This document shows positions 19,796 to 54,834 of a DNA stretch of 64,000 nt, piece by piece; within the stretch, counting starts at the first letter, position 1; the number at the start of each line of letters is the position of its first letter. The stretch spans positions 186,001-250,000 of the IMG/VR virus record IMGVR_UViG_3300044680_000280. One strand, given 5' to 3'. A model generated the notes under the pieces. That model was not told the DNA's origin, ran no database searches, and saw only the letters and a list, made by a program, of their open reading frames with translations. Position numbers and translations under genes: made by a program.

Positions 19796-21697
19796 CTACA
19801 CCATATTCAGAAAGGCCTCTTCGGAAATTGTCTCCGTGCCGTGCTTCTTTGCCGCCTGAGCCTTTAGGGAGGCGGAGCTCGGATCCGCCAGGACGAGGTA
19901 CGTGAGACCCTTACCGACTCGGTCTTTGACAGTCCCGCCAGCCGCCGTAACCTTCCCCTCCAACACGGCGCGCTTGTTCTTCGTTTTACCGGTGAAGCAG
20001 AAACTCTTCCCGGTCAAGTTCCCAATGATTCTGTCCTTCACGGGGATGCCGCATGTATCCACCCAGGCCGCATACTTAGCAAACCAGTTCACTAAGGTGC
20101 GGGCTCGAACAGGTCCAATCCCCTTGATCGCCAGAAGCTGGTCGTACGTGACCTCTTTCAGCTTGCTGTAGGTGTCGAACCCCGCATCGACAACCAGGGT
20201 CAGGACCGACTTCCCGCACCCTGGAATGGCGAGGGATCCGAAAAACAGGTCAATAGGGACGGGCGACTTTGAATGGAGGTTGTCCAGGAGTTTCTTGGCG
20301 GACTTGTTCCCCATTCGATCGATTTCGGAGAGTTTCGCCTGGTCGAGCTTGTAGAGGTCGGCGACGGTCGACACCAACCCCGACTCAAGCAGACGGGCCA
20401 GGACCGCCTCACCCCACTCCAGAATGTTGAGCGAGCTAACGTACCGAACGAGCCTTCCAAGGGCCTGCGCAGGGCACTCAAACGTGTTGGGACACACGAC
20501 GAAGGGGCCATCCCACTCCGTCGTCGCACCGCACGAAGGGCACACGGACGGGGGTTCGGCAACGCTACCTCGTACCGTGAGGTTTTCGACCACACGAGGA
20601 ATCACGTCATTCGCCCGAGCCACGAGGATCTTACACCCAACGTCCAGTTTCAGGTCCTGAACGTACTTCCAGTTGTACAGGCTTGCACGACTGACCTTGG
20701 TGCCGAGCAGGTTCACCTCGTCGAAAATGACAACGGGGGTAATTTGGCCCGTCACCCCTGTCGCGCTTTCGATCGTGCGAACGACGCTCTGACGCGTAAT
20801 CGGAGCAAATTTGAAAGCTCGGGCACCTTTGGGGCGTCCGTTGGTGTCCCCCAAGGAGAGTTGGTGCGGAATACTGTTCAGCTCAACAACGAGTCCGTCG
20901 ATGGCGTAATCGAGGGACATACGTTTCCCCTGCTGGTATTCGAGCCACAGGTCATGGGGGGTCTTGATTCCAGGGGCCATCGCCGTGACGTACCAACCAG
21001 GAACGTTGAATCCCATTTCTTCAAGGAATTCGATGTGCTCACTTCTCTTCTCCGCCTCTAAGCCATCCACTTGATAGGCCAGGACTGTCAAGTGCTCACA
21101 GCCCTGACCATCGAGCCGACTGGAAACACCCCCCGCGGTGTTCCTGGGGTTCGAGTAAGTCGAAAAGTGCGCTTTCATGTCGCTCAAAAGGACGATGATC
21201 TCACCCCTGATCTCGCCTGTGAATTTCTTCGAAAGGCGACCTGGAACGCCCTTCATTTTACACACATTGACGGATATGTCATCCCCCTCGATGCCGTCTC
21301 CCCGCGTAACCCCCCGAACGAATGCACCGCTGTCGTATTGGATGGCGACCGAGATCCCATCCAGCTTCTCTGTAACGAGGAGCTCCTCGAAGGGCTGATT
21401 GCCGGTCGAAAGACCGTGCACCCAAGAGGTCAGCTCCGACGGAGTTTTCACCTTATCGAGAGACCCCATGGGAATTTCGTGGCGAACCTTGCTCCAACCG
21501 GAAGGGGCGTGATCTCCAATCACCGCCAAATCGGGGTTGTCCGCCTCAAGCTCCCGCAACTCGTCCTCCCACCCGTCGTACACCTCATCCGAAACGATGG
21601 GGTTATGATCGACGTAGTACGCACGACGAGCTTCCTTACGCTTAGCGACGAGCTCTTCAATACGCTGCGCCTTGGACTCCGGGGTAAGACTTTCCAT
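19796..21697 (-). CDS. ligA: NAD-dependent DNA ligase
   Basis: EKLDG, TRGDG, RGE, zinc finger, HhH, BRCT; ATG 21697 follows a GGTGTA motif. Confidence 0.95.
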   Translation of the reverse strand: MESLTPESKAQRIEELVAKRKEARRAYYVDHNPIVSDEVYDGWEDELRELEADNPDLAVIGDHAPSGWSKVRHEIPMGSLDKVKTPSELTSWVHGLSTGNQPFEELLVTEKLDGISVAIQYDSGAFVRGVTRGDGIEGDDISVNVCKMKGVPGRLSKKFTGEIRGEIIVLLSDMKAHFSTYSNPRNTAGGVSSRLDGQGCEHLTVLAYQVDGLEAEKRSEHIEFLEEMGFNVPGWYVTAMAPGIKTPHDLWLEYQQGKRMSLDYAIDGLVVELNSIPHQLSLGDTNGRPKGARAFKFAPITRQSVVRTIESATGVTGQITPVVIFDEVNLLGTKVSRASLYNWKYVQDLKLDVGCKILVARANDVIPRVVENLTVRGSVAEPPSVCPSCGATTEWDGPFVVCPNTFECPAQALGRLVRYVSSLNILEWGEAVLARLLESGLVSTVADLYKLDQAKLSEIDRMGNKSAKKLLDNLHSKSPVPIDLFFGSLAIPGCGKSVLTLVVDAGFDTYSKLKEVTYDQLLAIKGIGPVRARTLVNWFAKYAAWVDTCGIPVKDRIIGNLTGKSFCFTGKTKNKRAVLEGKVTAAGGTVKDRVGKGLTYLVLADPSSASLKAQAAKKHGTETISEEAFLNMV

Positions 21698-32294: not shown

Positions 32295-33932
32295 TCACCA
32301 GCTCTTGCGAGACTGCTTCTTGGACTTTTCTTTTTTACAGACGTGTTTCGCTTCGTGTGTTGGGGACGGGTCAGGTTCAGAGTGGGCCGATGGGTCTACA
32401 CCGAAGAAATCGAACGAACTAACCGGGGTAAGCGGAGGCATCCCGATGGTCAAAGTTCCGACACCGGGATCGGGTATGAATGATTGCACCATATGCAGCG
32501 GAGGAGACGGGTGCACCATCATTTCCACGAATGTTTCTTGAATGGCTGGTTGAACGATCGCTGGTTGAACAGTAACTCCAGCGAACGCGTTGGACGTGTT
32601 CGTCGTGGTCGTTGTGTTCATTTGGACCCCGAGGTTCGCGAGGTCGCTATCCGCACCGCCCGCGTAGCAGGAAACCCCAAGACCGCGCGAAGCCCCGTTC
32701 TGGAAGCTCCGTAGGTAACTGGCGTTCTGAACGTACTTGTCCGCACTGTCGACGCTAGAACCGAGCTTCCTGGAGACCGCCGCAAGGCTCAGAAGACCCC
32801 GCGAGCCGAAATCAGCGGCTTTGGCCGCCATGATGTCAGCGGCCGCCTGATAGGAGCCCTTCTTGGCGGCTTCCTCAGCTTCAATTTGAGCTCGAACAAG
32901 TTGAGCCAATCCAACGATGGCGTCGAGACTGGGATCCGGTTTCGACTCGAGGTCCTCCTTGCGAACGAACTGAGCCTTAACCTTGGTCTCTTCCGTGTGA
33001 TCGTGCTTCTTACCTTGAGCGTCGAATGTTTGGTACGTTGCATGCAAGTCGAAGACATTCACGGCACGAGGACCGTGGGTCTTCTGCTTGGCGAGTCGAA
33101 CCGCAACGACAATGTGACGAGCCTCCTCAGCAAGAAGGTCAGGGATCTGGATGTGAACCTCCCCCGTGCTGTCGTTGTCGTCCACGTCAACGTCAGAAAC
33201 GACCGAATTAATGACGTGTCCGCTTGTGGGCTTCAAGTAGAGGTCAATGTTTGTCGCGTAGGTCGAGATGAGTCCGCCGAGTTCCGTACCGAACGCCTTG
33301 AGAGCTTTGTCCGGGTTTTCGACATGGGCGTAATTACCCTTCCCCTCCCGAGCAAACTCCGTAAGAAGATTAGAGTCGAATTCCCCCTGTGTGTTGGAGC
33401 CATACCCGAAGGCACTGCACGTGACGTGCTCACGGTTCGACGTGAGTAGATTAATGATGTCCTTACTGGTCTTCGCGGGACCGACGTTGGCCGCGCCGTC
33501 CGTCAACATGATGACACGGTGAATGTAGTCTCCGCCGATATCGAGCGCCTTGAGTAGCTCGAGACTCATGAGTAGGCCGCCCGAAAAATTCGTCATGCCG
33601 TCCGCCTTGAGTCCGGCAACAACCTTTCTGAGGGCATCCTTGTCTCTGACCCGAGCGGGGGCGAACGCCGTGCTCGCCTTGGAACCAAAAGTCACGATTC
33701 CAAGAATGTCGTCGTGCTTCAGATGCTCGATGATCTTGAGGGCACTCTGCTTGACGTACTCGAGTTTCTCACCCGCCATAGAGCTACTGACGTCAACACA
33801 AAGAACCATCGCCAGCTTTGGGCGAGTCTGTTCAACGTCAACCGGGGGAGCCGTCAGACTGACGACAAGGTGGGTTGTGTTTTCATCATCGAAATGGAAT
33901 TTGTTGGTGACAAGACGTGCTTCGAGTTTCAT
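32295..33932 (-). CDS. vWA domain protein
   Basis: MIDAS DVSSSM, TNF, MLTDG. Confidence 0.85.
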   Translation of the reverse strand: MKLEARLVTNKFHFDDENTTHLVVSLTAPPVDVEQTRPKLAMVLCVDVSSSMAGEKLEYVKQSALKIIEHLKHDDILGIVTFGSKASTAFAPARVRDKDALRKVVAGLKADGMTNFSGGLLMSLELLKALDIGGDYIHRVIMLTDGAANVGPAKTSKDIINLLTSNREHVTCSAFGYGSNTQGEFDSNLLTEFAREGKGNYAHVENPDKALKAFGTELGGLISTYATNIDLYLKPTSGHVINSVVSDVDVDDNDSTGEVHIQIPDLLAEEARHIVVAVRLAKQKTHGPRAVNVFDLHATYQTFDAQGKKHDHTEETKVKAQFVRKEDLESKPDPSLDAIVGLAQLVRAQIEAEEAAKKGSYQAAADIMAAKAADFGSRGLLSLAAVSRKLGSSVDSADKYVQNASYLRSFQNGASRGLGVSCYAGGADSDLANLGVQMNTTTTTNTSNAFAGVTVQPAIVQPAIQETFVEMMVHPSPPLHMVQSFIPDPGVGTLTIGMPPLTPVSSFDFFGVDPSAHSEPDPSPTHEAKHVCKKEKSKKQSRKSW

Positions 33933-34960: not shown

Positions 34961-35509
34961 TCAGCCCGTTCCCGCGACATATCCCGCCGCCTCAAGGTAC
35001 GGAAGCATCCGGGGATGCGGATTCCGCAGATTGAAAATAGGGGACGTCATCGGCAACGTCTTCGGCTTGTACGGCTTCCTCAGAAGTTTCATTCCCGCCT
35101 GCTCGGGCGTTCGACGATCCTTCTTGGTATTGCACCTGTAGCAACTCGCAACAATATTTTCCCAGGTCGTTTGACCGCCCTGGTGCCTAGGCCGAACGTG
35201 ATCGTAGTTCAGTTGCCCCATCTCGAATTGCTTTCCGCAGTACTGACAACGAAATGCGTCTCGAGTGAAGACGTTGACTCGGCTGAACTTGATGCCCTTC
35301 TTGAAACCGTCGACATTTCGAATCAACCGAACAACCATGGGCATCCCGAAAGAAACACGCGGATTCGTCTCGGACCCCGCCGATGAGATGACCTCATCGT
35401 AAGTCTCGAGAAGATCGCACTTGCCCTGAACGTAGTCGAGAGCTGCTTCTTGCCAAGGGATTAGCCTATGTGGGCTCATCCATGGGGTTAAAATTAACGT
35501 ATGGTTCAT
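34961..35509 (-). CDS. HNH endonuclease (McrA-like)
   Basis: RDAFRCQYCG, DHV.P...GG.TTWEN..SCYRCN. Confidence 0.9.
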   Translation of the reverse strand: MNHTLILTPWMSPHRLIPWQEAALDYVQGKCDLLETYDEVISSAGSETNPRVSFGMPMVVRLIRNVDGFKKGIKFSRVNVFTRDAFRCQYCGKQFEMGQLNYDHVRPRHQGGQTTWENIVASCYRCNTKKDRRTPEQAGMKLLRKPYKPKTLPMTSPIFNLRNPHPRMLPYLEAAGYVAGTG

Positions 35510-35608
35510 TTTTGAGCCTCCTTTCATGGGCTTAGCGTTTAGTATTCACTACGTGGATGGGTGATTCAATCCGTAATCGCACAACGGCACGATGCCATAA
35601 CGAGAACA

Positions 35609-35769: not shown

Positions 35770-35979
35770 TCAAGAGTGATGATGCACGAAGCGGTGTCTT
35801 CGCATCAGGGCGACCCGTACTGCCGCCGCAGGGGAGAAGAACTTCCTCTTCTGCCACTTGGGTTCTGAAAACAGAGCCAAAGCAGCCGTGGCGACCGTGT
35901 TCTTCTGAGCGGTCGTCAAAGTCGGAGCTCTTTGATCGACAATGACCAAGAGTTCGGAGAGAGTCGGAGTGGTCATCAA
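35770..35979 (-). CDS. hypothetical protein
   Basis: GAGGAG RBS, coupled to upstream gene. Confidence 0.6.
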   Translation of the reverse strand: MMTTPTLSELLVIVDQRAPTLTTAQKNTVATAALALFSEPKWQKRKFFSPAAAVRVALMRRHRFVHHHS

Positions 35980-38597
35980 GCAATCTCCTCAATGCTAAAC
36001 CAGGGGTACATCGGAGCGGCGGCCATCTCACCCAAGGCTGTAAAACCACCGTTGTAAGTGATCACCACCTCAACGAGTCCAGGAGACCCACTGGTTTGAT
36101 AGTACCCAACGCACGGAGCCCCCGTGGCATGATCCCCAGCGGTCGGAGGAGACCCTTGCTGCCCATCGTCCAATCTTGTACCAACACCGATCGAACTGCC
36201 ATTATTAGCATCACGCCACTCGAAATAGATGGCGCCCTGTCCAACACCTTCGTTCGGAGAAAACGTCAACTTGTATGTATGATTCGCAGCGAGCGTGATT
36301 CGTCCGATACTCGGAGCACCCAGAGTCGTTGTGTACGATGAACTCGAGTCCAGGGCGATGTCTGAACCGACGGAGAAATACGACGAATTGAACTTGACGT
36401 GATCCCCGGCACTCAAATTGGTTGACTGAGTCGAACTTACGTAGCCATGAACGACATTCAGGATTGGGTTCTGCCACGAAGCCGTGCCCTCCCCAGTTGC
36501 CACAAGCGTCTGCCCAACCGCGGTCGGACCCGAACCCTGAACAACCGCTAACGTCGCGGGCACCCAAGCACTACCATTCCACCAATAGGGCTGTGTAGAG
36601 CTCTCGTCGTAATACATCATTCCTTCTTGAACGTTGCCGGGGTAGAACCCGCTCTCGTACAGGGCGGTCGTAATCACGTTGAGTCCGGCCATCGTGGCGC
36701 CCGTGGACGATGGGCCCGTAAAGGTCGCAGTCAGTATAAGGTGTGTTCCGTCTACCAGAGACGAGATCGTGTAGTTTCCCGAAACCGTCGGGGAACCGCC
36801 ACTAAAGGTGACCTGCTGCCCGACGGTAAACTCAGACGTCGAACCGCTGGTCAAAGTGACCTCAGCGTTTCCGGTCGTCACATCGACGGTAACCGACGGG
36901 GGTACGCCAGTGTAATTCTCATTCAAGTAGACCGTGTTACCACCAACCTCTGAAACTTTATACACAACACCGGGTTGAGAGGCAAAGATCAGATTGACGT
37001 TGTTTCCGCTCCAACTCGTTTGGGCGACCGACGCAGTAACTATGTTGGAGTTGTACTGAACGGTAAAGGTGCCGCTGGCGGTACCAGCATTAGACGGCTG
37101 AGGAAAAGATCCGGAGCCAGAAAATGGTGTCAATGCCGAGGCCGAGGAACCCTGCCAATACACATTAATCCCTCCCGAATAATACGGAAGGAAAGGAAAC
37201 GGATTCGAAAGGTCCCCGTAGTAGGGCCCCTGCATGTAAAACTGGAATGAAGTACCGAACGACGATGGGGTACCGGCGACAAAACTGTCATCGAAGAAGT
37301 TGTACTGTGTTGTCAGGATGTAGATATCCCCTCCCGTGCCAGCATTGGATCCGCAGTTGATAAACGCGGTGGTGGCCGAACTGTCCGATCCTGCGTAGCC
37401 GCCAGATCCTATCGTAAGGTACACAAATGGCGCGTACAAACTGACGTCGAAAATACCGCCATTGTAGTCCACCGCCATAACCGAATTTTCGTCTATGGTC
37501 ATCATAGGCGGTAGCTGAGACGGTGTTCCAAGAAAGAGTTGATTGCTGAACTCCGTAAGAGCAACAAGGCCGCCAGTGATATGAAGGAAACCCTCATTCC
37601 AGGTGTTGCCGTCGTAAATACCGATGTAAGTGGAGAACTCTTCCGTTGGGGTACTTCCGGTGAGAGTAATCTGAGAGAGGTTGTAGTCGAACCCGAGAGT
37701 CCAACAGATGGTCCCGTTGGCCTCGTCGGGCGTCACGGCGTTAACGTTCGTAACCTGGACCGAAGTGGCAGAAATGTAATTGGTGATTACGAACGTACCG
37801 TTGTTGCCACCGTTCGAGACATTCGTGAACGTAATGACTTTACCAACGTCACCTGAAACTATCCCACTCAGCCCCGTAATCGTAGCAAGGGTGCCATCGA
37901 AAGCGGTGACGGAGGCGGACGCGACTCCCTGAGTGTACCAACCGATTTCCCCATTATTGGCATCGTCGGCGACCGCAGATGCATTCGCAACGATTACCGA
38001 AGACGGAGAGAGTACCTCAACTATGGGGAATGTCCCGTTGTTGCCAGAACTCGCCGCCGCATAGACCACAAGAGTCTGTCCCACCAAGGGGGCGATCATA
38101 CTGGACATGCCCGTGATGGTCATGTTTCCGCCAGAAACGGTTGTGATCGAAGCAGTGCCACCCTCCCCGCTCGTGGGAAGGAGCTGGATCATACAATCGT
38201 CGATCGAATCATCGATGACGATTGTCGACGGAATTCCCGTCTCCGTGATCGAAGACTGCGCCGCTGTGTAAGCGTCATAGAAGGTGGCGAACACGTTTCC
38301 ACTGGGTGTCGCCCCCTGACGGTAAACGAAGGTGTTACTGCTACTACTGCCAGAAGGGCCCTCGGGTCCTTCTGGTCCAGTTGCACCAGTTGCCCCCGTT
38401 GCACCCGGGGAACCGGGCGGTCCCTGTTGTCCAGTTGCACCTTGTGGCCCCTGCGGGCCTGGGGGACCAGGAGGACCAGCTACTCCCGGGGGACCTCTGA
38501 AATTGGCATCATTCACACTGTACCCGCGGAATGAATTGTTTAAAGACGAGGTCGTAAAATTCGTACCCGGCGTCTTAGGTCCGTAAGCGTTCCCCAT
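35976..38597 (-). CDS. collagen-repeat fibre/appendage protein
   Basis: Gly-X-Y run near N-terminus; repeated beta modules (GNNGTF.I). Confidence 0.75.
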   Translation of the reverse strand: MGNAYGPKTPGTNFTTSSLNNSFRGYSVNDANFRGPPGVAGPPGPPGPQGPQGATGQQGPPGSPGATGATGATGPEGPEGPSGSSSSNTFVYRQGATPSGNVFATFYDAYTAAQSSITETGIPSTIVIDDSIDDCMIQLLPTSGEGGTASITTVSGGNMTITGMSSMIAPLVGQTLVVYAAASSGNNGTFPIVEVLSPSSVIVANASAVADDANNGEIGWYTQGVASASVTAFDGTLATITGLSGIVSGDVGKVITFTNVSNGGNNGTFVITNYISATSVQVTNVNAVTPDEANGTICWTLGFDYNLSQITLTGSTPTEEFSTYIGIYDGNTWNEGFLHITGGLVALTEFSNQLFLGTPSQLPPMMTIDENSVMAVDYNGGIFDVSLYAPFVYLTIGSGGYAGSDSSATTAFINCGSNAGTGGDIYILTTQYNFFDDSFVAGTPSSFGTSFQFYMQGPYYGDLSNPFPFLPYYSGGINVYWQGSSASALTPFSGSGSFPQPSNAGTASGTFTVQYNSNIVTASVAQTSWSGNNVNLIFASQPGVVYKVSEVGGNTVYLNENYTGVPPSVTVDVTTGNAEVTLTSGSTSEFTVGQQVTFSGGSPTVSGNYTISSLVDGTHLILTATFTGPSSTGATMAGLNVITTALYESGFYPGNVQEGMMYYDESSTQPYWWNGSAWVPATLAVVQGSGPTAVGQTLVATGEGTASWQNPILNVVHGYVSSTQSTNLSAGDHVKFNSSYFSVGSDIALDSSSSYTTTLGAPSIGRITLAANHTYKLTFSPNEGVGQGAIYFEWRDANNGSSIGVGTRLDDGQQGSPPTAGDHATGAPCVGYYQTSGSPGLVEVVITYNGGFTALGEMAAAPMYPWFSIEEIA

Positions 38598-38738: not shown

Positions 38739-39104
38739 TAGTGGACCCGCCGAGAATTGAACTCGGGTCCGAAAGATCGTCCTGATCACCCTCGTTACGT
38801 GCGTAGTCGGCTTGAGGCAACCGACGGCCTTGCGGGAAATGGGTGAGTTGACCCGCGTCTCAGCAACCTAATGTGTCCCCAGCTCACCGATTGCGAGGTG
38901 GCTGTATGCCTCGTGTGGGTTGACGACCCGTTGTCCGATACTCGAAGTCCTCTCGGACGGGTCGCCGATCAGGCCGCGATGGCGAGATCGGGGATGCCGT
39001 TGTCGTTGGCTGGTGTTTTCGCCTCGATTTGATTAAGCCGGGTCGAAGGAGCCCGCCTACACGCAGATGGTCGTTCTGTTCCTCCGTCGAAACCTGTCAG
39101 GCCC
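38739..39104 (-). ncRNA. ssrA: tmRNA, tag (A)ANDNGIPDLAIAA
   Basis: 5' GGGCCTGACAGGTTTCGAC; tag ORF ANDN...LAIAA*; 3' T arm and G3:U70 Ala acceptor. Confidence 0.93.
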
Positions 39105-42606: not shown

Positions 42607-42960
42607 TCAGACTGAAAATGAGCCGCCGCAGTTACAACTGGACGCCTCATTCGGGTTGATGAACTTGAAGCCTTGGCGCATGAGAGTCTGTTCCCATTCG
42701 AGTGTCATCCCGTTCAAATAGAGCAGGCTCTTCGGATCAACAACGATCCGAACAGGGGAGCCGTCCGATGACGTGTAGTCGAAGACCATGTCACGGGACC
42801 CAGGCTCCCCATCGTGAAACTGTATGACGTACGAGAATCCAGAACACCCCCCGCCTTTGACACCGAGCCGTAGACTCGTGTTTGGAATGTCCCTCTTTTT
42901 GATCTGACGAGCCACCGCATCAATTGCGGAGGGCGTCAAAGTGATCTGAGAATCAGGCAT
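42607..42960 (-). CDS. iscA: A-type Fe-S cluster carrier (IscA/HesB)
   Basis: RLGVKGGGCSGFSY, FINPN..SCNCGGSF. Confidence 0.92.
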   Translation of the reverse strand: MPDSQITLTPSAIDAVARQIKKRDIPNTSLRLGVKGGGCSGFSYVIQFHDGEPGSRDMVFDYTSSDGSPVRIVVDPKSLLYLNGMTLEWEQTLMRQGFKFINPNEASSCNCGGSFSV

Positions 42961-42978
42961 AATCCTTAGTTTAGCATT

Positions 42979-43050
42979 TGGTGTCTCTGCCCGAAGTCGA
43001 ATCGGGTAGCCAACCTTCGGAGAGTCGGCGCGGGATCCGCCCGCAGAGAC
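42979..43050 (-). tRNA. tRNA-Arg(CCG), reduced D arm
   Basis: Loop CTCCGAA, CCA. Confidence 0.72.
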
Positions 43051-43053
43051 GTT

Positions 43054-43130
43054 TGGTACCCTCGGAAGGATTCGAACCTTCAACCTTTCCGATAGAAGCG
43101 GACAGCTCTAATCCGTTGAGCTACGAGGGT
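43054..43130 (-). tRNA. tRNA-Arg(TCT)
   Basis: Canonical cloverleaf with CCA. Confidence 0.88.
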
Positions 43131-43131
43131 G

Positions 43132-43206
43132 TGGAGAGCCCGTTCGGAGTTGAACCGAACAATAACGGGTTTGCAATCCGTCCCCGCCACCGGGCGAATC
43201 GGGCTC
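43132..43206 (-). tRNA. tRNA-Cys(GCA)
   Basis: GCA loop, U73, CCA. Confidence 0.85.
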
Positions 43207-49395: not shown

Positions 49396-49521
49396 CGCCC
49401 GGTTTCCGATTCGAACGGAAAGCTTGTGCGGACTGTCGAAGAGCCCCTTTTTATGGGGGCGAGGAACAGACCTGGGTATCTCTAAACCAAAGAGGTGGGG
49501 AACCATTCCCCTATACCGGGC
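49396..49521 (-). ncRNA. tRNA-mimic RNA 1 with large variable-arm module
   Basis: GCCCGGT/ACCGGGC acceptor, D hairpin, TTCCG-TTCGAAT-CGGAA T arm, conserved insert. Confidence 0.7.
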
Positions 49522-49572: not shown

Positions 49573-49989
49573 TTACATCCTAACCTTTCGTGTCTTCATG
49601 GCATGACAAAGTACACAAAGCAACTGTAAGTTGGTCATCGAGTTATTAGTCCGATCTCCGTCTATGTGATCAGCATCTAGTAGTGCCACAGGTACAAGGA
49701 TCCCTGCGATTCGCAGTTTGCACTGTGGACTTGCACACTCATTGGGCAAGTTCTGTAGCGCGAGCCTTCGGTACCCAATCGAGTTTCCATGTACAAAACG
49801 ACCGTGCTCTGGACCTGAGTGATAGACCTTATAGTTAAGATTATTGTATGTGTTCCGGCACGTTGTGTCGCAAAACACGTTTTGCGTTTTGCGTTTCTTT
49901 CTGCGCAACTGTGACACTAACGTACGGACCGGCTTACCGCACTGAGCGCATGGCAACACTATCGGAGGTAGTCTTTTACGTACTGACAC
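49573..49989 (-). CDS. HNH endonuclease with N-terminal zinc finger
   Basis: CAQCGK..FCDTTC; DHIDGDRTNN..NLQLLC..CH. Confidence 0.88.
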   Translation of the reverse strand: MSVRKRLPPIVLPCAQCGKPVRTLVSQLRRKKRKTQNVFCDTTCRNTYNNLNYKVYHSGPEHGRFVHGNSIGYRRLALQNLPNECASPQCKLRIAGILVPVALLDADHIDGDRTNNSMTNLQLLCVLCHAMKTRKVRM

Positions 49990-50138: not shown

Positions 50139-50267
50139 GGCCGGGTGATGGATTCGAACCATCCGAGCGTGTGGACACCCATGGTGACTCCCGTCTGAGG
50201 GGAGCGAGGTTGGAAGTCGGTTATGATTCCCTATTGAGAGGAAGCGGGACCCAAGTCCCTACCCGGC
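50139..50267 (-). ncRNA. tRNA-mimic RNA 2 with large variable-arm module
   Basis: GCCGGGT/ACCCGGC acceptor, GGGAC/GTCCC D arm, GATGG-TTCGAAT-CCATC T arm. Confidence 0.7.
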
Positions 50268-50323
50268 ATACGATGACGAACTTCAAGGCGTCGTACTGTG
50301 CCTTCCCCTGATGGGGAAAATTT

Positions 50324-50470
50324 CCCTTCCGCGTTCGAGTAGCTATGGCTGAAATTGCTTTGTTCGTTTTGCAGACGAATGCCTTACCACTTGGCGACAA
50401 TCCCCAATGGGGATCGATGGGATTCGAACCCACGAATGCTTGTGAGCCACAACAGAGAAACGCGAGAAGG
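50324..50470 (-). ncRNA. circularly permuted tRNA mimic (YrlA/Y-RNA-like)
   Basis: Order T arm, closed acceptor CGATCCCC-ATT-GGGGATTG, D arm, GCA anticodon arm; enclosed by long terminal stems. Confidence 0.75.
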
Positions 50471-50473
50471 TAG

Positions 50474-50613
50474 AGGGGAGTCCTGGATTCGAACCAGGTG
50501 AGCTTGTAGGAGCTACGAGGGTCCCTTTCTAGGGGGACGAGGTGCAGCGCCGGAATTTTGCCGAAGAAGGCATCTGATTTTTGGTCAGACTGGGACCCAG
50601 TCCCAAACTCCCC
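50474..50613 (-). ncRNA. tRNA-mimic RNA 3 with large variable-arm module
   Basis: GGGGAGT/ACTCCCC acceptor, GGGAC/GTCCC D arm, CCTGG-TTCGAAT-CCAGG T arm. Confidence 0.7.
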
Positions 50614-50717: not shown

Positions 50718-51293
50718 TCAAATGACGAGAAGGCTCGAGGGACTGATGCTGTACCCGACCTTCTTGCCCTTGGTCAAAAACACCTTGGCCGCGTGGGCGA
50801 GATAGGACGAAACGATGGAGATGAACGGAAGGTGCTCCCCGTCCTCGCAGGTTGCCCCGCCGACAGAGCCCTCATCGTCGATGACGAATGACTCGTCCCA
50901 GACGACCCGGCCGAACTCACCGTTAGCGGAAAGAGCTCCGTGCAAGCACGGGATGCCCTGCTTGCGAACGTAGCCCTGAATGATCCGGCGACCTTCCCCG
51001 TTGTCGAGGCAATCGACAACAAGACTCGAACCCCCGAGGAGCGCATGAACGTTGTCGGCGATGAGCTTATTTGGGTTTTGCTCGATCTTGCGAGCGAAGA
51101 GAAAATGCATCGTCTGCGCGAGAGACTGAACCTTCAGCTTGCCGACGCTCGACTTGCCGTGGAACTGGCTCTGCGTGTTCTTCTGCTCCACGCGATCCAT
51201 GTCGATGACGAGAAGAGTCGCGTCCACGTTTCGAAGAAGCTGGACGGCGTGGGACCCGAGAGCCCCAACGCCGACGATGGTGACGCGCCCCAT
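50718..51293 (-). CDS. ThiF/E1-like adenylating enzyme
   Basis: IVGVGALGS, DMDRVEQKN..SQ, VVDCLDN, candidate catalytic ATCE. Confidence 0.88.
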   Translation of the reverse strand: MGRVTIVGVGALGSHAVQLLRNVDATLLVIDMDRVEQKNTQSQFHGKSSVGKLKVQSLAQTMHFLFARKIEQNPNKLIADNVHALLGGSSLVVDCLDNGEGRRIIQGYVRKQGIPCLHGALSANGEFGRVVWDESFVIDDEGSVGGATCEDGEHLPFISIVSSYLAHAAKVFLTKGKKVGYSISPSSLLVI

Positions 51294-51294
51294 C

Positions 51295-51582
51295 TCAGAC
51301 GGAGCCGAAGGGGGTTTTCGGTCGGAGATGGATGAGCTGAAAGGGCCGAACGTCGTTCGGAGCGAAACGGTCAACGACGTAGTCGGTGAAGTTTGCGTTC
51401 GCGTCGGCATTGATCCCCGGGACGGTGCCCGTGCGGACCGCTTCCGAGACGAGCCGCCTGACTTCCGTGTCCGACGAATCGAACGGAATCGGAGATACGA
51501 GGTCTCCCGTCTGACCTGCCCACGTCACGTTGACGCGCGCCTCGTGTGCGAGCACTTCCTGGTAAACTTGAACTTGGTCCAT
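51295..51582 (-). CDS. ubiquitin-like (beta-grasp) protein
   Basis: 95 aa between JAB and E1; C-terminus LRPKTPFG-SV. Confidence 0.65.
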   Translation of the reverse strand: MDQVQVYQEVLAHEARVNVTWAGQTGDLVSPIPFDSSDTEVRRLVSEAVRTGTVPGINADANANFTDYVVDRFAPNDVRPFQLIHLRPKTPFGSV

Positions 51583-51600
51583 GGTCTTTCTCCTCTCATC

Positions 51601-51990
51601 TCATTGCCCGCGTTGCTGCGAGCGAAGTCGTAGTTCGTCGATCCACGTGTACCGTAGAGATTCACGCGGAGAGAATATCGTGTAGTCGTAAGGTCCGGGA
51701 CCTTCCCACCGTGCGAGTATGTACCGATCCGCACTGGTAATCCACCAAAAAAGGCGGATGCCGAGACCGAGTTCCACGGCCGAAAAAGTTGTGAGGTCCG
51801 TCCCCGACGGTTCGGGGATCCCGCTGCCAGGATGACTGTGCGCGAAACCCGAAAGGTTGTGCCGGTTTTCCCAGAGCACATCCCAAAGGTCGCGGCTGTC
51901 GGCAAGATGAGTCGGTCCTCGGTCTAAAGGCTCGTGCCAATAGATCGGTTTCCTATCGAGATCGACAACAACGCCCGCTTCAATAGACAT
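51601..51990 (-). CDS. JAB/JAMM metallo-isopeptidase
   Basis: N-terminal Glu (IEAG) and HSHP...PSGTD. Confidence 0.85.
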   Translation of the reverse strand: MSIEAGVVVDLDRKPIYWHEPLDRGPTHLADSRDLWDVLWENRHNLSGFAHSHPGSGIPEPSGTDLTTFSAVELGLGIRLFWWITSADRYILARWEGPGPYDYTIFSPRESLRYTWIDELRLRSQQRGQ

Positions 51991-52032
51991 GGCACGCTTC
52001 TTTCATTCGTCGTCAAGTCATCTCACTCCCCG

Positions 52033-52950
52033 TCAACGAAAGACGACGAGAACTCCCAGAGCTTGAGCCTCCAAGATTACACCGGGAAGTGATTCGAGCG
52101 TAAAGAGGCGGTCGTTCTCTCGCCCAGCGAGGCAGACGCCCGCGTCAACGATCCGTAGGTTCATGTCGCAGACACACTCGAATCGTCGGGCGGAAAGACG
52201 AAATGTAACGATCATCTCCCCACGGTTCGTGCTGTTGTGATGGTCCAGGTATTCAGCTCCCCCGACGGCAAGAGCGGAACGAGCTGCCTCCCCGAAGTCG
52301 AGCCGTGCCGCCTCGCGGCGACCGACCGAGCTTCCGAGCTGGCCAAAAATCCTCTGACGTTCTTCCTCACGTACTCGACGCTCTTCTTCCTCTCGAGCGA
52401 TACGAGCAAGTTCTTCGCGGCGCCTCTGGGCTTCGAGCCGCTGGTAGACCGCCATGCGAAAGGAGGCATCCAACGCAGGTGGAACCCCACGAATGTTGTC
52501 CACAGACGTGATCCCGTCCTGAAAAGCGCGGTTGACGTCATCCTCGAGACCAAGGGGCATCTCCTGGTTGGCGTAAATGAGTGATCCGTCCTCGTACATA
52601 CGACCCACTCGAACACGAGCAAAACGATCGAGCCCGAGTTCGATCAGATGAACCTGCTCTGACTGACGGGCAATGTCCTCGGGAGATGGGTTGCACGGAG
52701 CATCGTCTACCACGAAGCGATCTCCAACAAGGTATCCCGTGTAGGTCTTACCGAGTACCTCGGGAGATGGATCGCACGGACCATCGATCCGGGCCTCTCG
52801 GTTCTTCAACCGAAAACGAAACCACCCAAACTCCCGAGGCAGTCGACCCTGAATGTTCCACGTACGAGCGTTGAGGCGGAGGACCCGTCCACCGACCCAA
52901 GGCGAGACGAGAGTCTCATCCTCAGTTTGCAGTAGGTCTTTCCACCCCAT
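52033..52950 (-). CDS. putative E2-like protein with coiled-coil linker
   Basis: C-terminal IVDAGVCL resembles the E2 G-x-V/I-C-L active site; operon context. Confidence 0.5.
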   Translation of the reverse strand: MGWKDLLQTEDETLVSPWVGGRVLRLNARTWNIQGRLPREFGWFRFRLKNREARIDGPCDPSPEVLGKTYTGYLVGDRFVVDDAPCNPSPEDIARQSEQVHLIELGLDRFARVRVGRMYEDGSLIYANQEMPLGLEDDVNRAFQDGITSVDNIRGVPPALDASFRMAVYQRLEAQRRREELARIAREEEERRVREEERQRIFGQLGSSVGRREAARLDFGEAARSALAVGGAEYLDHHNSTNRGEMIVTFRLSARRFECVCDMNLRIVDAGVCLAGRENDRLFTLESLPGVILEAQALGVLVVFR

Positions 52951-52968
52951 TTTCGCACCCCTGTCGAC

Positions 52969-54834
52969 TCAGGAAGCCCAAACGGGCTTCTCGAGTAGTT
53001 TTGTACGCAAAATTTCGTCAATCAGTGTCACACGAACGACAGGGGTCGACCGTGTTGTTTGTCCGACCGGCGTCGAGCTGACGAGAGCTCGAATCGTACG
53101 AGGAATCGCGTACGGATCCGCAAAGATCCGTTCGTCGATCATGAGACACGGAATTCCGAGAGCCGCGGCCGCACTCGTAATGGCCCCGTAGTTCTCTCCC
53201 GGCACTTCCAGCCACCCGAAGGCGACAGGATTGATGCCCGTGGTTCGAACGGCCGAAACGAACTTCGTCACGTCGCGCTCCCCACCGTCGCCGACGAAAA
53301 GGAAAATGGCATCCTCGTCAGCCCCGGGCTTCAGGTCGTTGAGCACTCGAACGCCCTCCGAGTGCAAGGTGCCGCCGTTTGCCCTGATGTTGAGGAAGGC
53401 GTTCTCGACGCCCGCCGTCGACGGATGACGAATGGTTACGATTCGTCCGACCGTGTTGAAGACCACGACGTGCAGTTTTTCGAGGGGAAACCCCTGAAGA
53501 AACCGACTGATGTAGGTCTTCGCGACCTGGATCGAAGTGTGCATCGATCCAGAGATGTCGACAATGACGTAGATGACGAGGCCCTTGACCGCCGCTGCGA
53601 CTTCACGTTGAAGCGCCTGGTCGGACGCCTCGACGAGCTTCTCAGCAACCTCTCTCGACTTGACGCGGAGGGCAATGTTCGCCGCCCTCATGTCCGTCGC
53701 CGTCTTCATCGCCTGCTCCCAACGAGCCTTGACCGTGGAGTCCTCGAGCAGTCCGAGCTCCTCGATCGTCGGAGTCAAGATACGAATGTCCTTGTCGGAC
53801 AAAGATCCGGCCTCGATGGAAGCCGCCATGATGGCGCGCGTGATGCCCATCTTCGGGGGAACGAGACCGCAGATGCGCTTGTAGTCGGGTCGATCCTTGA
53901 GGATGCGTTGGCAAATCTCGACTTCCGTCAGACCCTCCCACGATTCAGCGGGAGCAACATCCTGCCCGATGCGCATGACGCGGCGACCGTCCTTCGCCTG
54001 AGCCTGCTTCCAGCGAAGGATCTCGAAGAACGATGGCTTGGCGGGACGGTACCCGACGCGCCGAGCGAGCTCCATGACCGTTCGACGGTAGCCCTTTTTG
54101 ACGAGGCCCTGAAGGAGCTTCGGGTTTTCCTCGCGATAGAGCAGCCACTTGGTGACCGCCTTCTCCCAACGACCGAGGAAGGGAGTCCGCGCCGACTTGC
54201 CGAACCCAAGCTCACGGTTAATCGCCGCGACCTGGGGAAGCGTGAGGATCTCGTAGATGCGAACGAGGTCCTTGGCTCGGAGCGCGTGCTCGTCCTTGCT
54301 CGAGTACGTCAGAAGCATCGCCTCACCGACGTCCCGGAAATCTTCGTCGTGGAAGAGAACCTTCCCACCGTCGACGATCGGGTCACCCTTACGGTTTTGG
54401 ACGAGCATGAACGCCGCGAGGATGTCCTTGAGGTCGCGGTGCTCCTTGGTGAACTGGTAGCTCGCCCAACGTGCGGCGAACTCACTGTCCAGCTTCCAGA
54501 CCTCGGCGACCTGGCCATACATCCACGCAACGACCTCGGGAAAGAGCCCCGCCGGACGGTAGTGACTGACGACCTGACCGCGTTCGTTCCTGATCTCGCC
54601 GTTCTCGGCAAGGATACCGACACGAACTTTGACCGTCTTTTTGCCAGCCTTGTCGAGGCGATAAACGACCTTTTGCCCGTCTTCGACCTTGTGCGTCACG
54701 GGCTCCCAACGAACGCCGACGTTGAAGCGCGCGTCCGGAACGATTTGGCCCGGTCTGTTGTGCACCGCGTGGTCTTGGTACGTCAAAAGGGCTTGGATGA
54801 TTCGATCCGCTGCTCCCAGGTTTTCGTTGTTCAT
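52969..54834 (-). CDS. TROVE/Ro60-like helical domain plus C-terminal vWA
   Basis: vWA MIDAS DISGSM, GGT, VGDG; helical N-region with MELARRVGYRP and SWE recalling TROVE motifs. Confidence 0.6.
   Translation of the reverse strand: MNNENLGAADRIIQALLTYQDHAVHNRPGQIVPDARFNVGVRWEPVTHKVEDGQKVVYRLDKAGKKTVKVRVGILAENGEIRNERGQVVSHYRPAGLFPEVVAWMYGQVAEVWKLDSEFAARWASYQFTKEHRDLKDILAAFMLVQNRKGDPIVDGGKVLFHDEDFRDVGEAMLLTYSSKDEHALRAKDLVRIYEILTLPQVAAINRELGFGKSARTPFLGRWEKAVTKWLLYREENPKLLQGLVKKGYRRTVMELARRVGYRPAKPSFFEILRWKQAQAKDGRRVMRIGQDVAPAESWEGLTEVEICQRILKDRPDYKRICGLVPPKMGITRAIMAASIEAGSLSDKDIRILTPTIEELGLLEDSTVKARWEQAMKTATDMRAANIALRVKSREVAEKLVEASDQALQREVAAAVKGLVIYVIVDISGSMHTSIQVAKTYISRFLQGFPLEKLHVVVFNTVGRIVTIRHPSTAGVENAFLNIRANGGTLHSEGVRVLNDLKPGADEDAIFLFVGDGGERDVTKFVSAVRTTGINPVAFGWLEVPGENYGAITSAAAALGIPCLMIDERIFADPYAIPRTIRALVSSTPVGQTTRSTPVVRVTLIDEILRTKLLEKPVWAS

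What the first reader, a model, noticed from the sequence alone, without database searches (positions are those of the whole stretch)
50324..50470. Circularly permuted (YrlA-like) member of the same RNA family
Seen: the order is T arm, acceptor stem closed by an ATT loop, D arm (GCC-AAGTGGTAA-GGC), then an intact GCA anticodon arm. The ends pair as GTTGTGGCT/AGCCATAGC and CCTTC.CGCGTT/AACGCG.GAAGG. It keeps the CACAAGC motif before the T arm and the CTCG internal loop of its three neighbours, so it is the same molecule opened at the tip of the extra arm instead of the acceptor. Known: bacterial YrlA Y RNAs are permuted tRNA mimics with a closed acceptor stem. Inference: both topologies side by side may record how Y RNAs arose from tRNAs, and they mark the extra arm as the likely protein-binding site.
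Basis: partly seen in the sequence, partly recalled or inferred. Interest (0 to 1): 0.85.

Follow-up and report, generated by a model that had tools for sequence, protein, structure and literature searches.

The report
Circularly permuted tRNA-like RNA, huge phage
A huge bacteriophage encodes a conserved small RNA that has every part of a tRNA in rotated order (T arm, capped acceptor stem, D arm, anticodon arm, ends in a long extra arm); it belongs to an undescribed RNA family that resembles bacterial Y RNAs but is not one.

Summary
It is not an oddity of this genome. A covariance model finds 36-37 full-length homologs in about 27 related huge-phage contigs. In that alignment 94% of cells pair (63% when shuffled) and 40 of 42 pairs show compensatory changes.

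It shares a YACAMGC junction motif and a CUCG internal loop with a larger standard-order family of long-extra-arm tRNA-like RNAs (54 hits, also covarying). Three of those flank it in the window. In 16 of 36 cases a standard-order member ends 10 nt or less before the permuted one begins.

It is not a tRNA-Cys. The anticodon loop is unconserved among homologs, the discriminator is not U73, and it is unrelated to the phage's own tRNA-Cys.

It is not a YrlA member. It scores 19.8 bits against a threshold of 69, it is opened in the extra arm rather than the anticodon arm, and it lacks the Ro-binding motif. The upstream 621-aa protein resembles Ro60 in architecture only; TROVE homology was not shown.

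Of 31 homologs, 11 carry N73-CCA plus a spacer in the acceptor loop, while others (this one included) are capped by tight loops.

Best reading: a non-decoding, permuted tRNA mimic. It is a new variant of a known kind.

The parts
50324..50470 (-). Whole permuted tRNA-like RNA (147 nt as modelled)
   Evidence: MFE fold z = -4.2. R1 scores 189.5 bits and R3 131.7 bits; it is the only strong hit in the window.
50458..50470 (-). 5' strand of the terminal helices (CCUUC.CGCGUUU). It corresponds to the distal part of the extra arm.
   Evidence: Pairs with 50325-50336. Helices 1 and 2 are 84% and 97.5% paired across homologs, and all 12 pairs show compensatory changes.
50454..50457 (-). 5' side of the conserved internal loop (CUCU here; family consensus AYCA)
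   Evidence: Alignment A3 and per-sequence listing.
50445..50453 (-). Stem A, 5' strand in gene order (GUUGUGGCU)
   Evidence: Pairs with 50342-50350. All 9 of 9 pairs covary; the closing pairs C:G and U:A are nearly invariant.
50434..50444 (-). Single-stranded junction CACAAGCAUUC, holding the family signature YACAMGC(A)
   Evidence: Conserved in all 32 permuted homologs and in the standard-order family.
50417..50433 (-). T arm GUGGG-UUCGAAU-CCCAU
   Evidence: 100% paired and 4 of 5 pairs covary. Also matched by the Rfam YrlA and tRNA models.
50398..50416 (-). Closed acceptor hairpin: 66-72 CGAUCCC, C73, AUU, G-1, 1-7 GGGAUUG
   Evidence: 93.9% paired and 8 of 8 pairs covary. Loop types across homologs are listed.
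50381..50397 (-). U8-C9 and a canonical D arm GCC-AAGUGGUAA-GGC (A14, G18, G19, A21)
   Evidence: 100% paired. U8 and the GG are conserved across homologs.
50363..50379 (-). Anticodon-like arm UUCGU-CUGCAAA-ACGAA (GCA at 50370-50372)
   Evidence: The stem is 98.7% paired and 5 of 5 pairs covary. The loop sequence and length (6-9 nt; U33 often absent) are not conserved.
50351..50362 (-). Linker CAAAGCAAUUUC between the anticodon arm and stem A
   Evidence: Variable in sequence and length in A3.
50342..50350 (-). Stem A, 3' strand in gene order (AGCCAUAGC)
50337..50341 (-). 3' side of the internal loop, UACUC (with the next G this is the ACUCG motif)
   Evidence: (N)ACUC is conserved in nearly all homologs. 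CUCG is shared with the standard-order family.
50325..50336 (-). 3' strand of the terminal helices (GAACGCG.GAAGG)
50475..50613 (-). N1: a standard-order long-extra-arm tRNA-like RNA that ends 4 nt before the permuted RNA begins
   Evidence: R2 46.2 bits; fold z = -3.8. The same adjacency (10 nt or less) occurs in 16 of 36 homolog cases.
50140..50267 (-). N2: a standard-order family member 56 nt downstream
   Evidence: R2 41.1 bits. Weak Rfam tRNA-Sec match, 17.9 bits.
49397..49521 (-). N3: a standard-order family member, used as the seed of model R2
   Evidence: Fold z = -3.1. R2 family: 54 hits, 93.5% paired, 33 of 34 pairs covary.
52969..54834 (-). 621-aa protein: N-terminal beta domain, alpha-helical repeat, C-terminal vWA. 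It is a candidate partner only, with no evidence of binding.

Best explanation
The element is a gene for a non-decoding, circularly permuted tRNA mimic.

Shown:
- It contains a complete tRNA body: T arm, 7-bp acceptor, U8, a canonical D arm with G18G19, and a 5-bp anticodon-type stem.
- That body is mounted on a covarying terminal stem of about 21 bp, which is the opened extra arm.
- The acceptor end is capped by a 3-nt loop.
- The fold and two single-stranded motifs (YACAMGCA at the junction; AYCA/ACUCG in the internal loop) are conserved in about 27 related huge phages.
- The anticodon loop is free to vary.

Inferred:
- It is transcribed with the minus-strand tRNA array.
- It is released by 'tRNA punctuation'. 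3'-end processing of the standard-order tRNA-like RNA that ends 4 nt upstream would make its 5' end. Where a further tRNA-like gene follows within 2-5 nt, as in several relatives, RNase P would make its 3' end.
- The mature RNA would present a tRNA-shaped elbow and acceptor to tRNA-recognising proteins. The conserved internal loop and junction of the terminal stem would be bound by a dedicated protein.
- It would thus act as a scaffold or decoy in the manner of a Y RNA.
- The upstream alpha-repeat + vWA protein is the only named candidate partner. I put that at about 0.3.
For: - Structure: (z = -4.2). Independent MFE folds of four homologs give the same architecture.
- Conservation and covariation: (94.4% paired against 63% shuffled; 40 of 42 pairs compensatory; 37 strong hits at 66-132 bits, clearly separated from noise).
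- Non-decoding: anticodon loops differ in nearly every homolog, including the near-identical pair L007/L053. They are 6-9 nt long, often lack U33, and the arm is absent in L008:16373.
- Not tRNA-Cys: it is no closer to the phage's own tRNA-Cys than to other tRNAs, and that tRNA has U73-CCA.
- Capped acceptor: the window has C(AUU)G. Relatives have UUCG, GCAA, GUAA and UCCG loops.
- Punctuation: 16 of 36 have a standard-order member 10 nt or less upstream, and 5 have one 10 nt or less downstream.
- Shared motifs with the neighbours.
- Precedent for tRNA-mimic Y RNAs, including in phages: PMC4201824, PMC12135203, PMC7824862.
- Candidate protein: the only full-length Foldseek matches are Ro60/TROVE structures. 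About 69 of the 100 nearest ESM-Atlas clusters carry TROVE. The gene lies inside the tRNA array in all relatives.
Against: - There are no expression or end-mapping data.
- TROVE homology of the candidate protein is not demonstrated. The helical domain alone gives no Ro60 fold match and no profile similarity (P = 0.69). Pfam TROVE is absent from it and from its distant relatives. It sits in a cluster with JAB, a possible ubiquitin-like ORF and ThiF, which could be its real context.
- The bacterial Ro-binding motif GNCGAAN0-1G is absent.
- 11 of 31 homologs carry N73-CCA plus a spacer in the acceptor loop (P = 9e-13). At least some family members therefore expose a CCA end, which a pure 'capped scaffold' model does not explain.
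- Synteny within one phage clade is weak evidence of a functional link.
Confidence: 0.6

Rival explanations
1. It is a permuted gene for a two-piece (split) tRNA-like RNA. RNase P cuts 5' of G1 inside the acceptor hairpin. The short 3' tail is trimmed and CCA is added or retained. The two pieces stay joined through the roughly 21-bp extra-arm helix. The result is a CCA-ended, possibly aminoacylatable, non-decoding molecule, made in the same way as two-piece tmRNA.
For: - 11 of 31 homologs have the discriminator followed by exactly CCA and a 4-25 nt spacer before G1 (binomial P = 9e-13).
- Close relatives differ only in this respect: L003 has no CCA and L010 has ACCA.
- The acceptor is 7 bp, with a G1:C72-type end and a canonical elbow.
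- M. smegmatis YrlA, which has a 7-bp closed acceptor, is cleaved by RNase P and receives CCA in vivo (PMC4201824).
- Many standard-order relatives also encode N73-CCA.
Against: - The window copy has only a 3-nt loop closed by a C:G pair, and no CCA.
- Eight or more of its closest relatives cap the stem with hyper-stable UUCG or GNRA tetraloops, which implies selection for a closed hairpin.
- No CCA-adding enzyme or RNA ligase was found in the window.
Confidence: 0.22
2. It is a decoy for host tRNA-targeting defences (anticodon nucleases or acceptor-end-modifying toxins). The tRNA body soaks up the effector, and the fast-changing anticodon loop reflects an arms race.
For: - The anticodon loop diverges much faster than the rest of the molecule; L007 and L053 are otherwise almost identical.
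- The phage carries a very large tRNA set and a tmRNA, the usual sign of pressure on the host tRNA pool.
- Jumbo phages carry RNA-repair and ROT/TROVE systems interpreted in this way (PMC7824862).
Against: - A decoy for an anticodon nuclease should conserve the targeted loop, but here it is unconstrained and can be lost altogether.
- This model does not explain the conserved extra-arm motifs.
- No defence or counter-defence gene is linked.
Confidence: 0.1
3. It is a functional permuted tRNA-Cys gene. The ends are ligated (circular intermediate) and the acceptor is opened, as in Cyanidioschyzon merolae, giving a decoding tRNA.
For: The anticodon loop CUGCAAA is canonical (U33, GCA, A37), and all tRNA core elements are present.
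Against: - The anticodon is not conserved in any homolog.
- The discriminator is C (or A), not the U73 of the phage's own tRNA-Cys. That tRNA exists at 43132-43206 and is unrelated in sequence.
- The termini form a symmetric internal loop, not a bulge-helix-bulge.
- No splicing endonuclease or RtcB was seen in the window.
- A 60-nt extra arm would remain in the product.
Confidence: 0.04
4. It is an artefact: a junction of two decayed tandem tRNA genes, or chance complementarity.
For: Tandem tRNAs give partial hits to the permuted models (model positions 37-105 only). At least one alignment row (L039:4556-4728) is such a junction.
Against: - The two acceptor strands pair with each other and covary (8 of 8 pairs).
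- The terminal helices also covary (21 of 21 pairs).
- The T-arm-proximal strand has no upstream partner.
- Score separation is clear: 66-132 bits against 53 bits or less.
Confidence: 0.02

Closest known systems
YrlA-type bacterial and phage Y RNAs (Rfam RF02553; Chen et al. 2014, PMC4201824)
   Same: - Gene order T arm, closed acceptor hairpin, D arm.
- The tRNA-like module is carried on a helix formed by the 5' and 3' ends.
- That helix has a conserved internal loop.
- It occurs in tRNA-rich phages.
- The Rfam model aligns to T arm, acceptor and D arm (19.8 bits). The genuine Bxz1 YrlA itself scores only 32.5 bits.
   Different: - It is opened in a long extra arm, not at the anticodon loop, so a complete anticodon-type arm is kept (five helices at the junction rather than four).
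- There is no GNCGAAN0-1G motif; the conserved motif ACUCGR lies on the 3' strand.
- No demonstrable TROVE protein is adjacent.
- The family model R3 does not detect the Bxz1 YrlA.
Circularly permuted tRNA genes of Cyanidioschyzon merolae and some archaea
   Same: The 3' half precedes the 5' half. The acceptor strands are joined by a short intervening sequence, which in 11 of 31 homologs begins with discriminator-CCA. The transcript termini pair with each other.
   Different: The host is bacterial (a tmRNA is present). There is no bulge-helix-bulge at the termini. The break lies in an extra arm of about 60 nt. The anticodon is not conserved, so a decoding product is unlikely.
Two-piece tmRNA from permuted ssrA genes (alpha-proteobacteria, cyanobacteria)
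   Same: It is a bacterial-type precedent for a permuted tRNA-like gene: ...T arm, acceptor 3' strand, CCA, spacer, acceptor 5' strand... The two mature pieces are held together by base pairing.
   Different: There is no tag reading frame or pseudoknots, and ARAGORN does not call it. The phage has an ordinary one-piece tmRNA at 38741-39104. A canonical D arm is present.
tRNA-Sec and allo-tRNAs (long variable arm, long D stem; PMC5389517). These are relevant to the neighbours.
   Same: The standard-order neighbours have a 5-6 bp D stem with a 3-5 nt loop and a long extra arm. N2 gets a weak tRNA-Sec hit (17.9 bits).
   Different: The acceptor/T geometry is 7/5. The extra arm is about 60 nt, with an internal loop and conserved motifs. 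Anticodon loops are often non-canonical.

Membership tests
YrlA / bacterial Y RNA | Reaches the Rfam RF02553 gathering score | tested here: not met
   19.8 bits against 69, covering model positions 29-81 only. Caveat: the genuine Bxz1 YrlA scores only 32.5 bits, so this test is insensitive for phage members.
YrlA / bacterial Y RNA | tRNA-like module in the order T arm, closed acceptor, D arm | tested here: met
YrlA / bacterial Y RNA | The terminal 5'/3' stem takes the place of the anticodon stem (no anticodon arm) | tested here: not met
   An intact, covarying anticodon-type arm is present, and the termini lie in the extra arm. One relative, L008:16373-16497, does lack the arm.
YrlA / bacterial Y RNA | Ro-binding motif GNCGAAN0-1G on the 5' strand of the terminal stem | tested here: not met
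   The family consensus is ACUCGR, on the 3' strand. The window reads CUCGAAC, which contains CGAA but not the GN prefix (motif definition from PMC4201824).
YrlA / bacterial Y RNA | Encoded next to a Ro60 (TROVE + vWA) gene | tested here: inconclusive
   A 621-aa alpha-repeat + vWA protein lies 2.5 kb upstream. Foldseek's only full-length hits are Ro60/TROVE (E = 3e-7 to 1e-5, TM 0.24-0.31), and ESM-Atlas neighbours are mostly TROVE. Against this: no Pfam TROVE; the helical domain alone gives no Ro60 fold hit; hhalign gives P = 0.69 for the helical parts and 2.4e-6 for the vWA.
YrlA / bacterial Y RNA | Binds Ro60 in vivo or in vitro | not testable with these tools
   Needs EMSA or co-immunoprecipitation.
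Permuted tRNA gene (C. merolae / archaeal type) | 3' half upstream of 5' half, with the acceptor strands joined by an intervening sequence | tested here: met
Permuted tRNA gene (C. merolae / archaeal type) | Bulge-helix-bulge motif at the paired termini, for the splicing endonuclease | tested here: not met
   The terminal stem carries a roughly symmetric 4 x 5 nt internal loop between two helices, not 3-nt bulges offset by 4 bp.
Permuted tRNA gene (C. merolae / archaeal type) | Yields a decoding tRNA: conserved 7-nt anticodon loop with U33, and an identity that matches the anticodon | tested here: not met
   Loop sequence and length are unconserved and U33 is often absent. The window copy lacks U73 and is unrelated to the phage tRNA-Cys.
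Two-piece tmRNA | Tag-peptide reading frame and tmRNA pseudoknots; detectable by ARAGORN or Rfam tmRNA | tested here: not met
   Only the one-piece tmRNA at 38741-39104 is called.
Canonical tRNA | Contiguous cloverleaf recognised by ARAGORN or Rfam RF00005 over its full length | tested here: not met
   ARAGORN gives no call. RF00005 aligns only to the 5' half, with the T arm deleted (35.2 bits).
New family: permuted long-extra-arm tRNA-like RNA of huge phages (models R1 and R3) | Full-length match with covarying terminal helices, stem A, T arm, capped acceptor, D arm and anticodon stem, plus the YACAMGCA and ACUCG motifs | tested here: met
   131.7 bits with R3. There are 36-37 members in about 27 contigs.

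The most novel reading that the evidence does not exclude
Huge phages carry a whole repertoire of long-extra-arm tRNA-like genes in both standard and circularly permuted order. The permuted ones would be matured by RNase P and CCA processing into two-piece, CCA-ended molecules. In some lineages, including this one, they would instead have been capped into closed Y-RNA-like scaffolds. That would make the family a living series of intermediates from tRNA to Y RNA, and the first permuted or split tRNA-type genes in a bacterial virus.
Probability: 0.25. Interest if true: 0.9.

Novelty: new variant of a known kind. Interest (0 to 1): 0.72.

Why it matters
Permuted tRNA mimics are known in bacteria only as YrlA Y RNAs. 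Permuted tRNA genes are known only in a red alga and a few archaea.

Here a well-supported family (strong covariation, about 90 members across the two topologies) places both gene orders side by side in one phage clade. It includes variants with and without an encoded CCA, and with and without the anticodon arm. That makes two questions directly testable: how tRNA genes become permuted, and how a tRNA turns into a protein-binding scaffold.

It also flags four unannotated structured RNA genes in this window, and one in the GenBank record KX853510. Standard tRNA finders miss all of them.

Tried and rejected
- tRNA-Cys reading: rejected.
- Tandem-tRNA junction artefact: rejected by covariation. 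One alignment row, L039:4556-4728, was recognised as such a junction and discounted.
- Ro60 identity of the 621-aa protein. The PDB sequence search found nothing, or vWA only. Pfam, NCBIfam and PHROGs gave vWA only. The full-length fold search favoured Ro60, but the helical domain alone did not. hhalign against a Ro60 profile gave P = 1.9e-4 over 305 columns, which proved to be driven by the vWA. A profile search of 1.8 billion proteins found 520-570 aa relatives, none with Pfam TROVE. Left as inconclusive.
- 305-aa neighbouring protein: no family and no Atlas lead.
- Close relatives in GenBank phages by DNA: none. By protein, only Virus Rctr197k.
- IMG/VR scan with the junction motif ACAAGCA...GGTTCGANTCC: too unspecific. 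Strong permuted hits fell only in contigs of the same phage clade.
- Search of the window for an RNA ligase or CCA-adding enzyme: none found. The genes are for replication and recombination, GroEL, ribonucleotide reductase and DNA ligase.
- Literature searches for permuted tRNAs or long-arm tRNA-like RNAs in phages: nothing relevant.

Full report
CONTEXT. The window comes from a huge phage (IMG/VR contig IMGVR_UViG_3300044680_000280, 406 kb; a 463-kb record also exists). Its minus strand carries 37 tRNA genes and a one-piece tmRNA. The finding lies in that array, just downstream of a five-ORF block. The block is a 621-aa vWA protein, a 305-aa protein of unknown function, a JAB/JAMM protein, a 95-aa ORF and a ThiF-type E1-like protein.

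THE OBSERVATION. Read on the minus strand, 50470 to 50324 gives, in order:
- CCUUC.CGCGUUU (terminal helices, 5' strand)
- CUCU (internal loop)
- GUUGUGGCU (stem A)
- CACAAGCAUUC (junction)
- T arm GUGGG-UUCGAAU-CCCAU
- acceptor hairpin
- U8-C9
- D arm GCC-AAGUGGUAA-GGC
- A26
- anticodon-type arm UUCGU-CUGCAAA-ACGAA
- a 12-nt linker
- AGCCAUAGC (stem A)
- UACUC (internal loop)
- GAACGCG.GAAGG (terminal helices, 3' strand)

RNAfold returns exactly this architecture (-54.3 kcal/mol; shuffles -38.3 +/- 3.8; z = -4.2). In the canonical tRNA register the T stem runs straight into CGAUCCC (positions 66-72). The 5' acceptor strand is GGGAUUG followed by U8. A C73:G-1 pair closes an AUU triloop. Rfam aligns its tRNA model to the 5' half only (35.2 bits). 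It aligns its YrlA model to T arm, acceptor and D arm only (19.8 bits against a gathering score of 69). ARAGORN calls nothing here.

IS IT MORE THAN CHANCE? I used the conserved 621-aa protein as a handle (more than 1,400 clusters at 60% identity or above, on contigs up to 570 kb). With it I fetched 60 related huge-phage loci plus the only GenBank relative, Virus Rctr197k.

A covariance model built from the window sequence alone (R1) found full-length matches in about half of them. Almost all lie 3-8 kb downstream of the vWA gene on the same strand. On the 32-sequence alignment:
- 94.4% of cells form standard pairs, against 63.0 +/- 0.9% after shuffling and 34-45% when partners are slid by 1-3 columns.
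- 40 of 42 pairs show changes on both sides.
- The covariation score is 0.777, against 0.08-0.13 for the slid controls.
- Every helix covaries, including both terminal helices and the acceptor hairpin.

A second-generation model (R3) gives a bimodal result. There are 37 hits at 66-132 bits in about 27 contigs. Tandem-tRNA junction noise scores 53 bits or less. The window holds exactly one true member. Independent MFE folds of four homologs reproduce the architecture. The feature is real and under selection.

WHAT IS CONSERVED AND WHAT IS NOT.

Conserved:
- U8.
- The D arm with GG, and the UUCGA T loop. Together these make a tRNA elbow.
- The closing C:G and U:A pairs of stem A.
- The single-stranded junction YACAMGCA.
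- The internal loop, roughly AYCA on the 5' side and (N)ACUC followed by G on the 3' side.

Not conserved:
- The anticodon loop. The triplet differs in almost every homolog (GCA, GAA, UGU, CGU, UUG, ACG, AGA, GAU, UAG, CAU and others).
- U33 is often A or C.
- Loop length ranges from 6 to 9 nt.
- The near-identical pair L007/L053 differs mainly in this loop.
- One member (L008:16373-16497) has no anticodon arm at all, yet folds well (z = -5.3).

The window copy is no closer to the phage's own tRNA-Cys than to any other tRNA. That tRNA (43132-43206) has U73-CCA, whereas this element has C73 and no CCA. The 'intact GCA anticodon' is therefore incidental. A decoding role is very unlikely.

THE ACCEPTOR CAP. 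Two states occur among 31 true homologs.
- Fifteen or so, including the window copy and its best-scoring relatives, have tight caps: AUU, CUC, UUCG (several), GCAA, GUAA or UCCG.
- Eleven have the 7-nt 3' acceptor strand followed by a discriminator, then exactly CCA, then a 4-25 nt spacer before G1. The probability under chance is 9e-13. Further members have near-misses (CCU, CCC, CCG).

Close relatives can differ in state: L003 lacks CCA while L010 has ACCA. The CCA-spacer form is the layout of permuted tmRNA genes. It invites RNase P and 3'-end processing. [quoted passage not shown] The hyper-stable tetraloops argue that the other form is kept closed. The window copy belongs to the closed class.

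RELATION TO THE NEIGHBOURS. A motif scan (YACANGC followed by a T arm) and a second model (R2, seeded on N3) define a standard-order family of 124-150 nt. Its parts are:
- a 7-bp acceptor with near-invariant G1:C72
- a D-like arm with a 5-6 bp stem and a 3-5 nt GG-containing loop
- an anticodon-type arm
- sometimes a small extra hairpin
- an extra arm made of stem A, an internal loop with CUCG, and a capped distal hairpin
- the YACAMGC junction
- a T arm

There are 54 hits with E < 1e-4, 93.5% paired against 61% shuffled, and 33 of 34 pairs compensatory. N1, N2 and N3 of the window are members (46, 41 and 163 bits). The permuted RNA therefore shares the extra-arm design and both motifs with them.

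It is a distinct sub-family, however. Its D arm is canonical, and the 3' side of its internal loop differs. Some standard-order orthologous groups keep recognisable loops (CUCAUAA, CGGUAAA, CUUCCAC, CUGUUAA), while others do not.

GENE ARRANGEMENT AND LIKELY MATURATION. In 16 of 36 cases a standard-order member ends 10 nt or less before the permuted RNA starts (4 nt in the window). In 5 cases another one starts 2-5 nt after it ends. Examples are L027 14478-14604 / 14607-14750 / 14756-14879, and similar trios in L054, L028, L010 and L002.

The permuted RNA's own ends are not tRNA ends. The simplest inference is that they are produced by tRNA-type processing of the flanking genes: 3' maturation upstream and RNase P downstream. 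In the window the downstream gap is 56 nt and contains a UUCCCC-AUCA-GGGGAA hairpin without a U tract. A sigma-70-like site lies about 58 nt upstream of N1 (weak evidence).

THE CANDIDATE PROTEIN. The AlphaFold model of the 621-aa protein (pLDDT 77, pTM 0.44) has three parts: a small N-terminal beta domain, an alpha-helical region (99-416) and a vWA domain (419-586).

For a Ro60 relationship:
- Against the PDB, the only matches covering the whole length (520-568 columns) are TROVE/Ro60 structures, including Ro60 of Thermus phage phiLo (E = 3e-7 to 1e-5). TM-scores are only 0.24-0.31.
- The ESM Atlas places TROVE/vWA_Ro60 families in about 69 of the 100 nearest clusters.

Against it:
- Pfam, NCBIfam and PDB profile searches see only the vWA.
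- Distant 520-570 aa relatives found in 1.8 billion proteins carry no TROVE.
- The helical domain modelled alone matches only generic HEAT/ARM repeats (E > 0.5).
- A profile-profile comparison with a Ro60 alignment built around Bxz1 gp220 gives P = 1.9e-4 overall. Split by domain, it gives P = 0.69 for the helical parts and 2.4e-6 for the vWA.

I therefore treat 'Ro60-like' as a resemblance in architecture, not an established homology. The protein's place in a JAB / possible Ubl / ThiF cluster offers an alternative context. Its position inside the tRNA array is conserved across the clade. That is ordinary phage synteny and proves little.

COMPARISON WITH KNOWN SYSTEMS. YrlA is the closest functional analogue: a tRNA-like module in the order T arm, capped acceptor, D arm, carried on a terminal stem that a protein binds, and known in tRNA-rich phages (PMC4201824, PMC12135203, PMC7824862). 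Membership fails on four counts.
- Score: 19.8 bits against 69. The real Bxz1 YrlA reaches only 32.5 bits.
- The break point.
- The presence of an anticodon arm.
- The absence of the GNCGAAN0-1G motif.

R3 does not detect the Bxz1 YrlA. Algal and archaeal permuted tRNA genes share the gene order but need a bulge-helix-bulge and yield decoding tRNAs; neither holds here. Two-piece tmRNA shares the CCA-spacer layout seen in a third of the homologs but nothing else. No Rfam family matches, and literature searches found no description.

VERDICT. It is not a YrlA, not a tRNA-Cys, and its protein partner is unproven. I classify it as a new variant of a known kind (a permuted tRNA mimic) belonging to an undescribed RNA family specific to one clade of huge phages.

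Noticed in passing
window 50475-50613, 50140-50267, 49397-49521 (minus strand): Three standard-order tRNA-like genes of 125-139 nt that ARAGORN misses. Each has an extra arm of about 60 nt and a Sec-like D arm (5-6 bp stem, 3-5 nt loop). They belong to a covarying family of at least 54 members in related phages. Many relatives encode N73-CCA.
   Followed up: yes
window, whole tRNA array; N2 at 50140-50267: None of the 37 called tRNAs has a CAU anticodon, so no Met, fMet or Ile2 tRNA is called. Orthologs of N2 in other phages carry a canonical CUCAUAA/CUCAUAC loop (L027:14756, L012:16180, L010:16274). N2 itself reads CUCAAUA. A possible link between the long-arm family and the missing tRNA-Met was not resolved.
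   Followed up: partly
L008:16373-16497: A permuted family member that lacks the anticodon arm altogether and has U-CCA in the acceptor loop. This is exactly the four-helix YrlA-type layout (fold z = -5.3).
   Followed up: partly
window 50718-54834 (minus strand): A gene block: vWA protein (621 aa), a 305-aa protein of unknown function, a JAB/JAMM protein (HSHPGSG...SGTD), a 95-aa ORF ending ...RPKTPFGSV (possibly ubiquitin-like) and a ThiF-type E1-like protein. It looks like a ubiquitin-like conjugation or sulfur-carrier cassette embedded in the tRNA array. An IscA-like Fe-S protein lies at 42607-43083.
   Followed up: partly
L062 (GenBank KX853510.1, Virus Rctr197k), about 20502-20683 in locus coordinates: A permuted family member (R3 67.6 bits) lies unannotated between CDS Rctr197k_219 and a tRNA-Met in the public record. 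In that record the vWA gene is annotated only as a misc_feature.
   Followed up: partly
window 49573-49989 and 34961-35527 (minus strand): HNH endonuclease ORFs are interspersed in the tRNA array. One lies between tRNA-Pro(UGG) and N3. They are probably homing endonucleases.
   Followed up: no
window 50300-50323 (minus strand): A hairpin UUCCCC-AUCA-GGGGAA lies directly after the 3' end of the permuted RNA, with no U tract on the transcribed strand. It may be a processing or stability element. In relatives this position is often occupied by the next tRNA-like gene instead.
   Followed up: no
window 32295-33932 (minus strand): A second, unrelated vWA protein (545 aa, N-terminal vWA) lies next to tRNA-Ser. 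A collagen-repeat protein of 873 aa is at 35976-38597.
   Followed up: no
L063:29979-30055 (Mycobacterium phage Bxz1): The accepted YrlA next to the Bxz1 Ro gene reaches only 32.5 bits with Rfam RF02553 (gathering score 69). The curated threshold therefore misses known phage Y RNAs.
   Followed up: no
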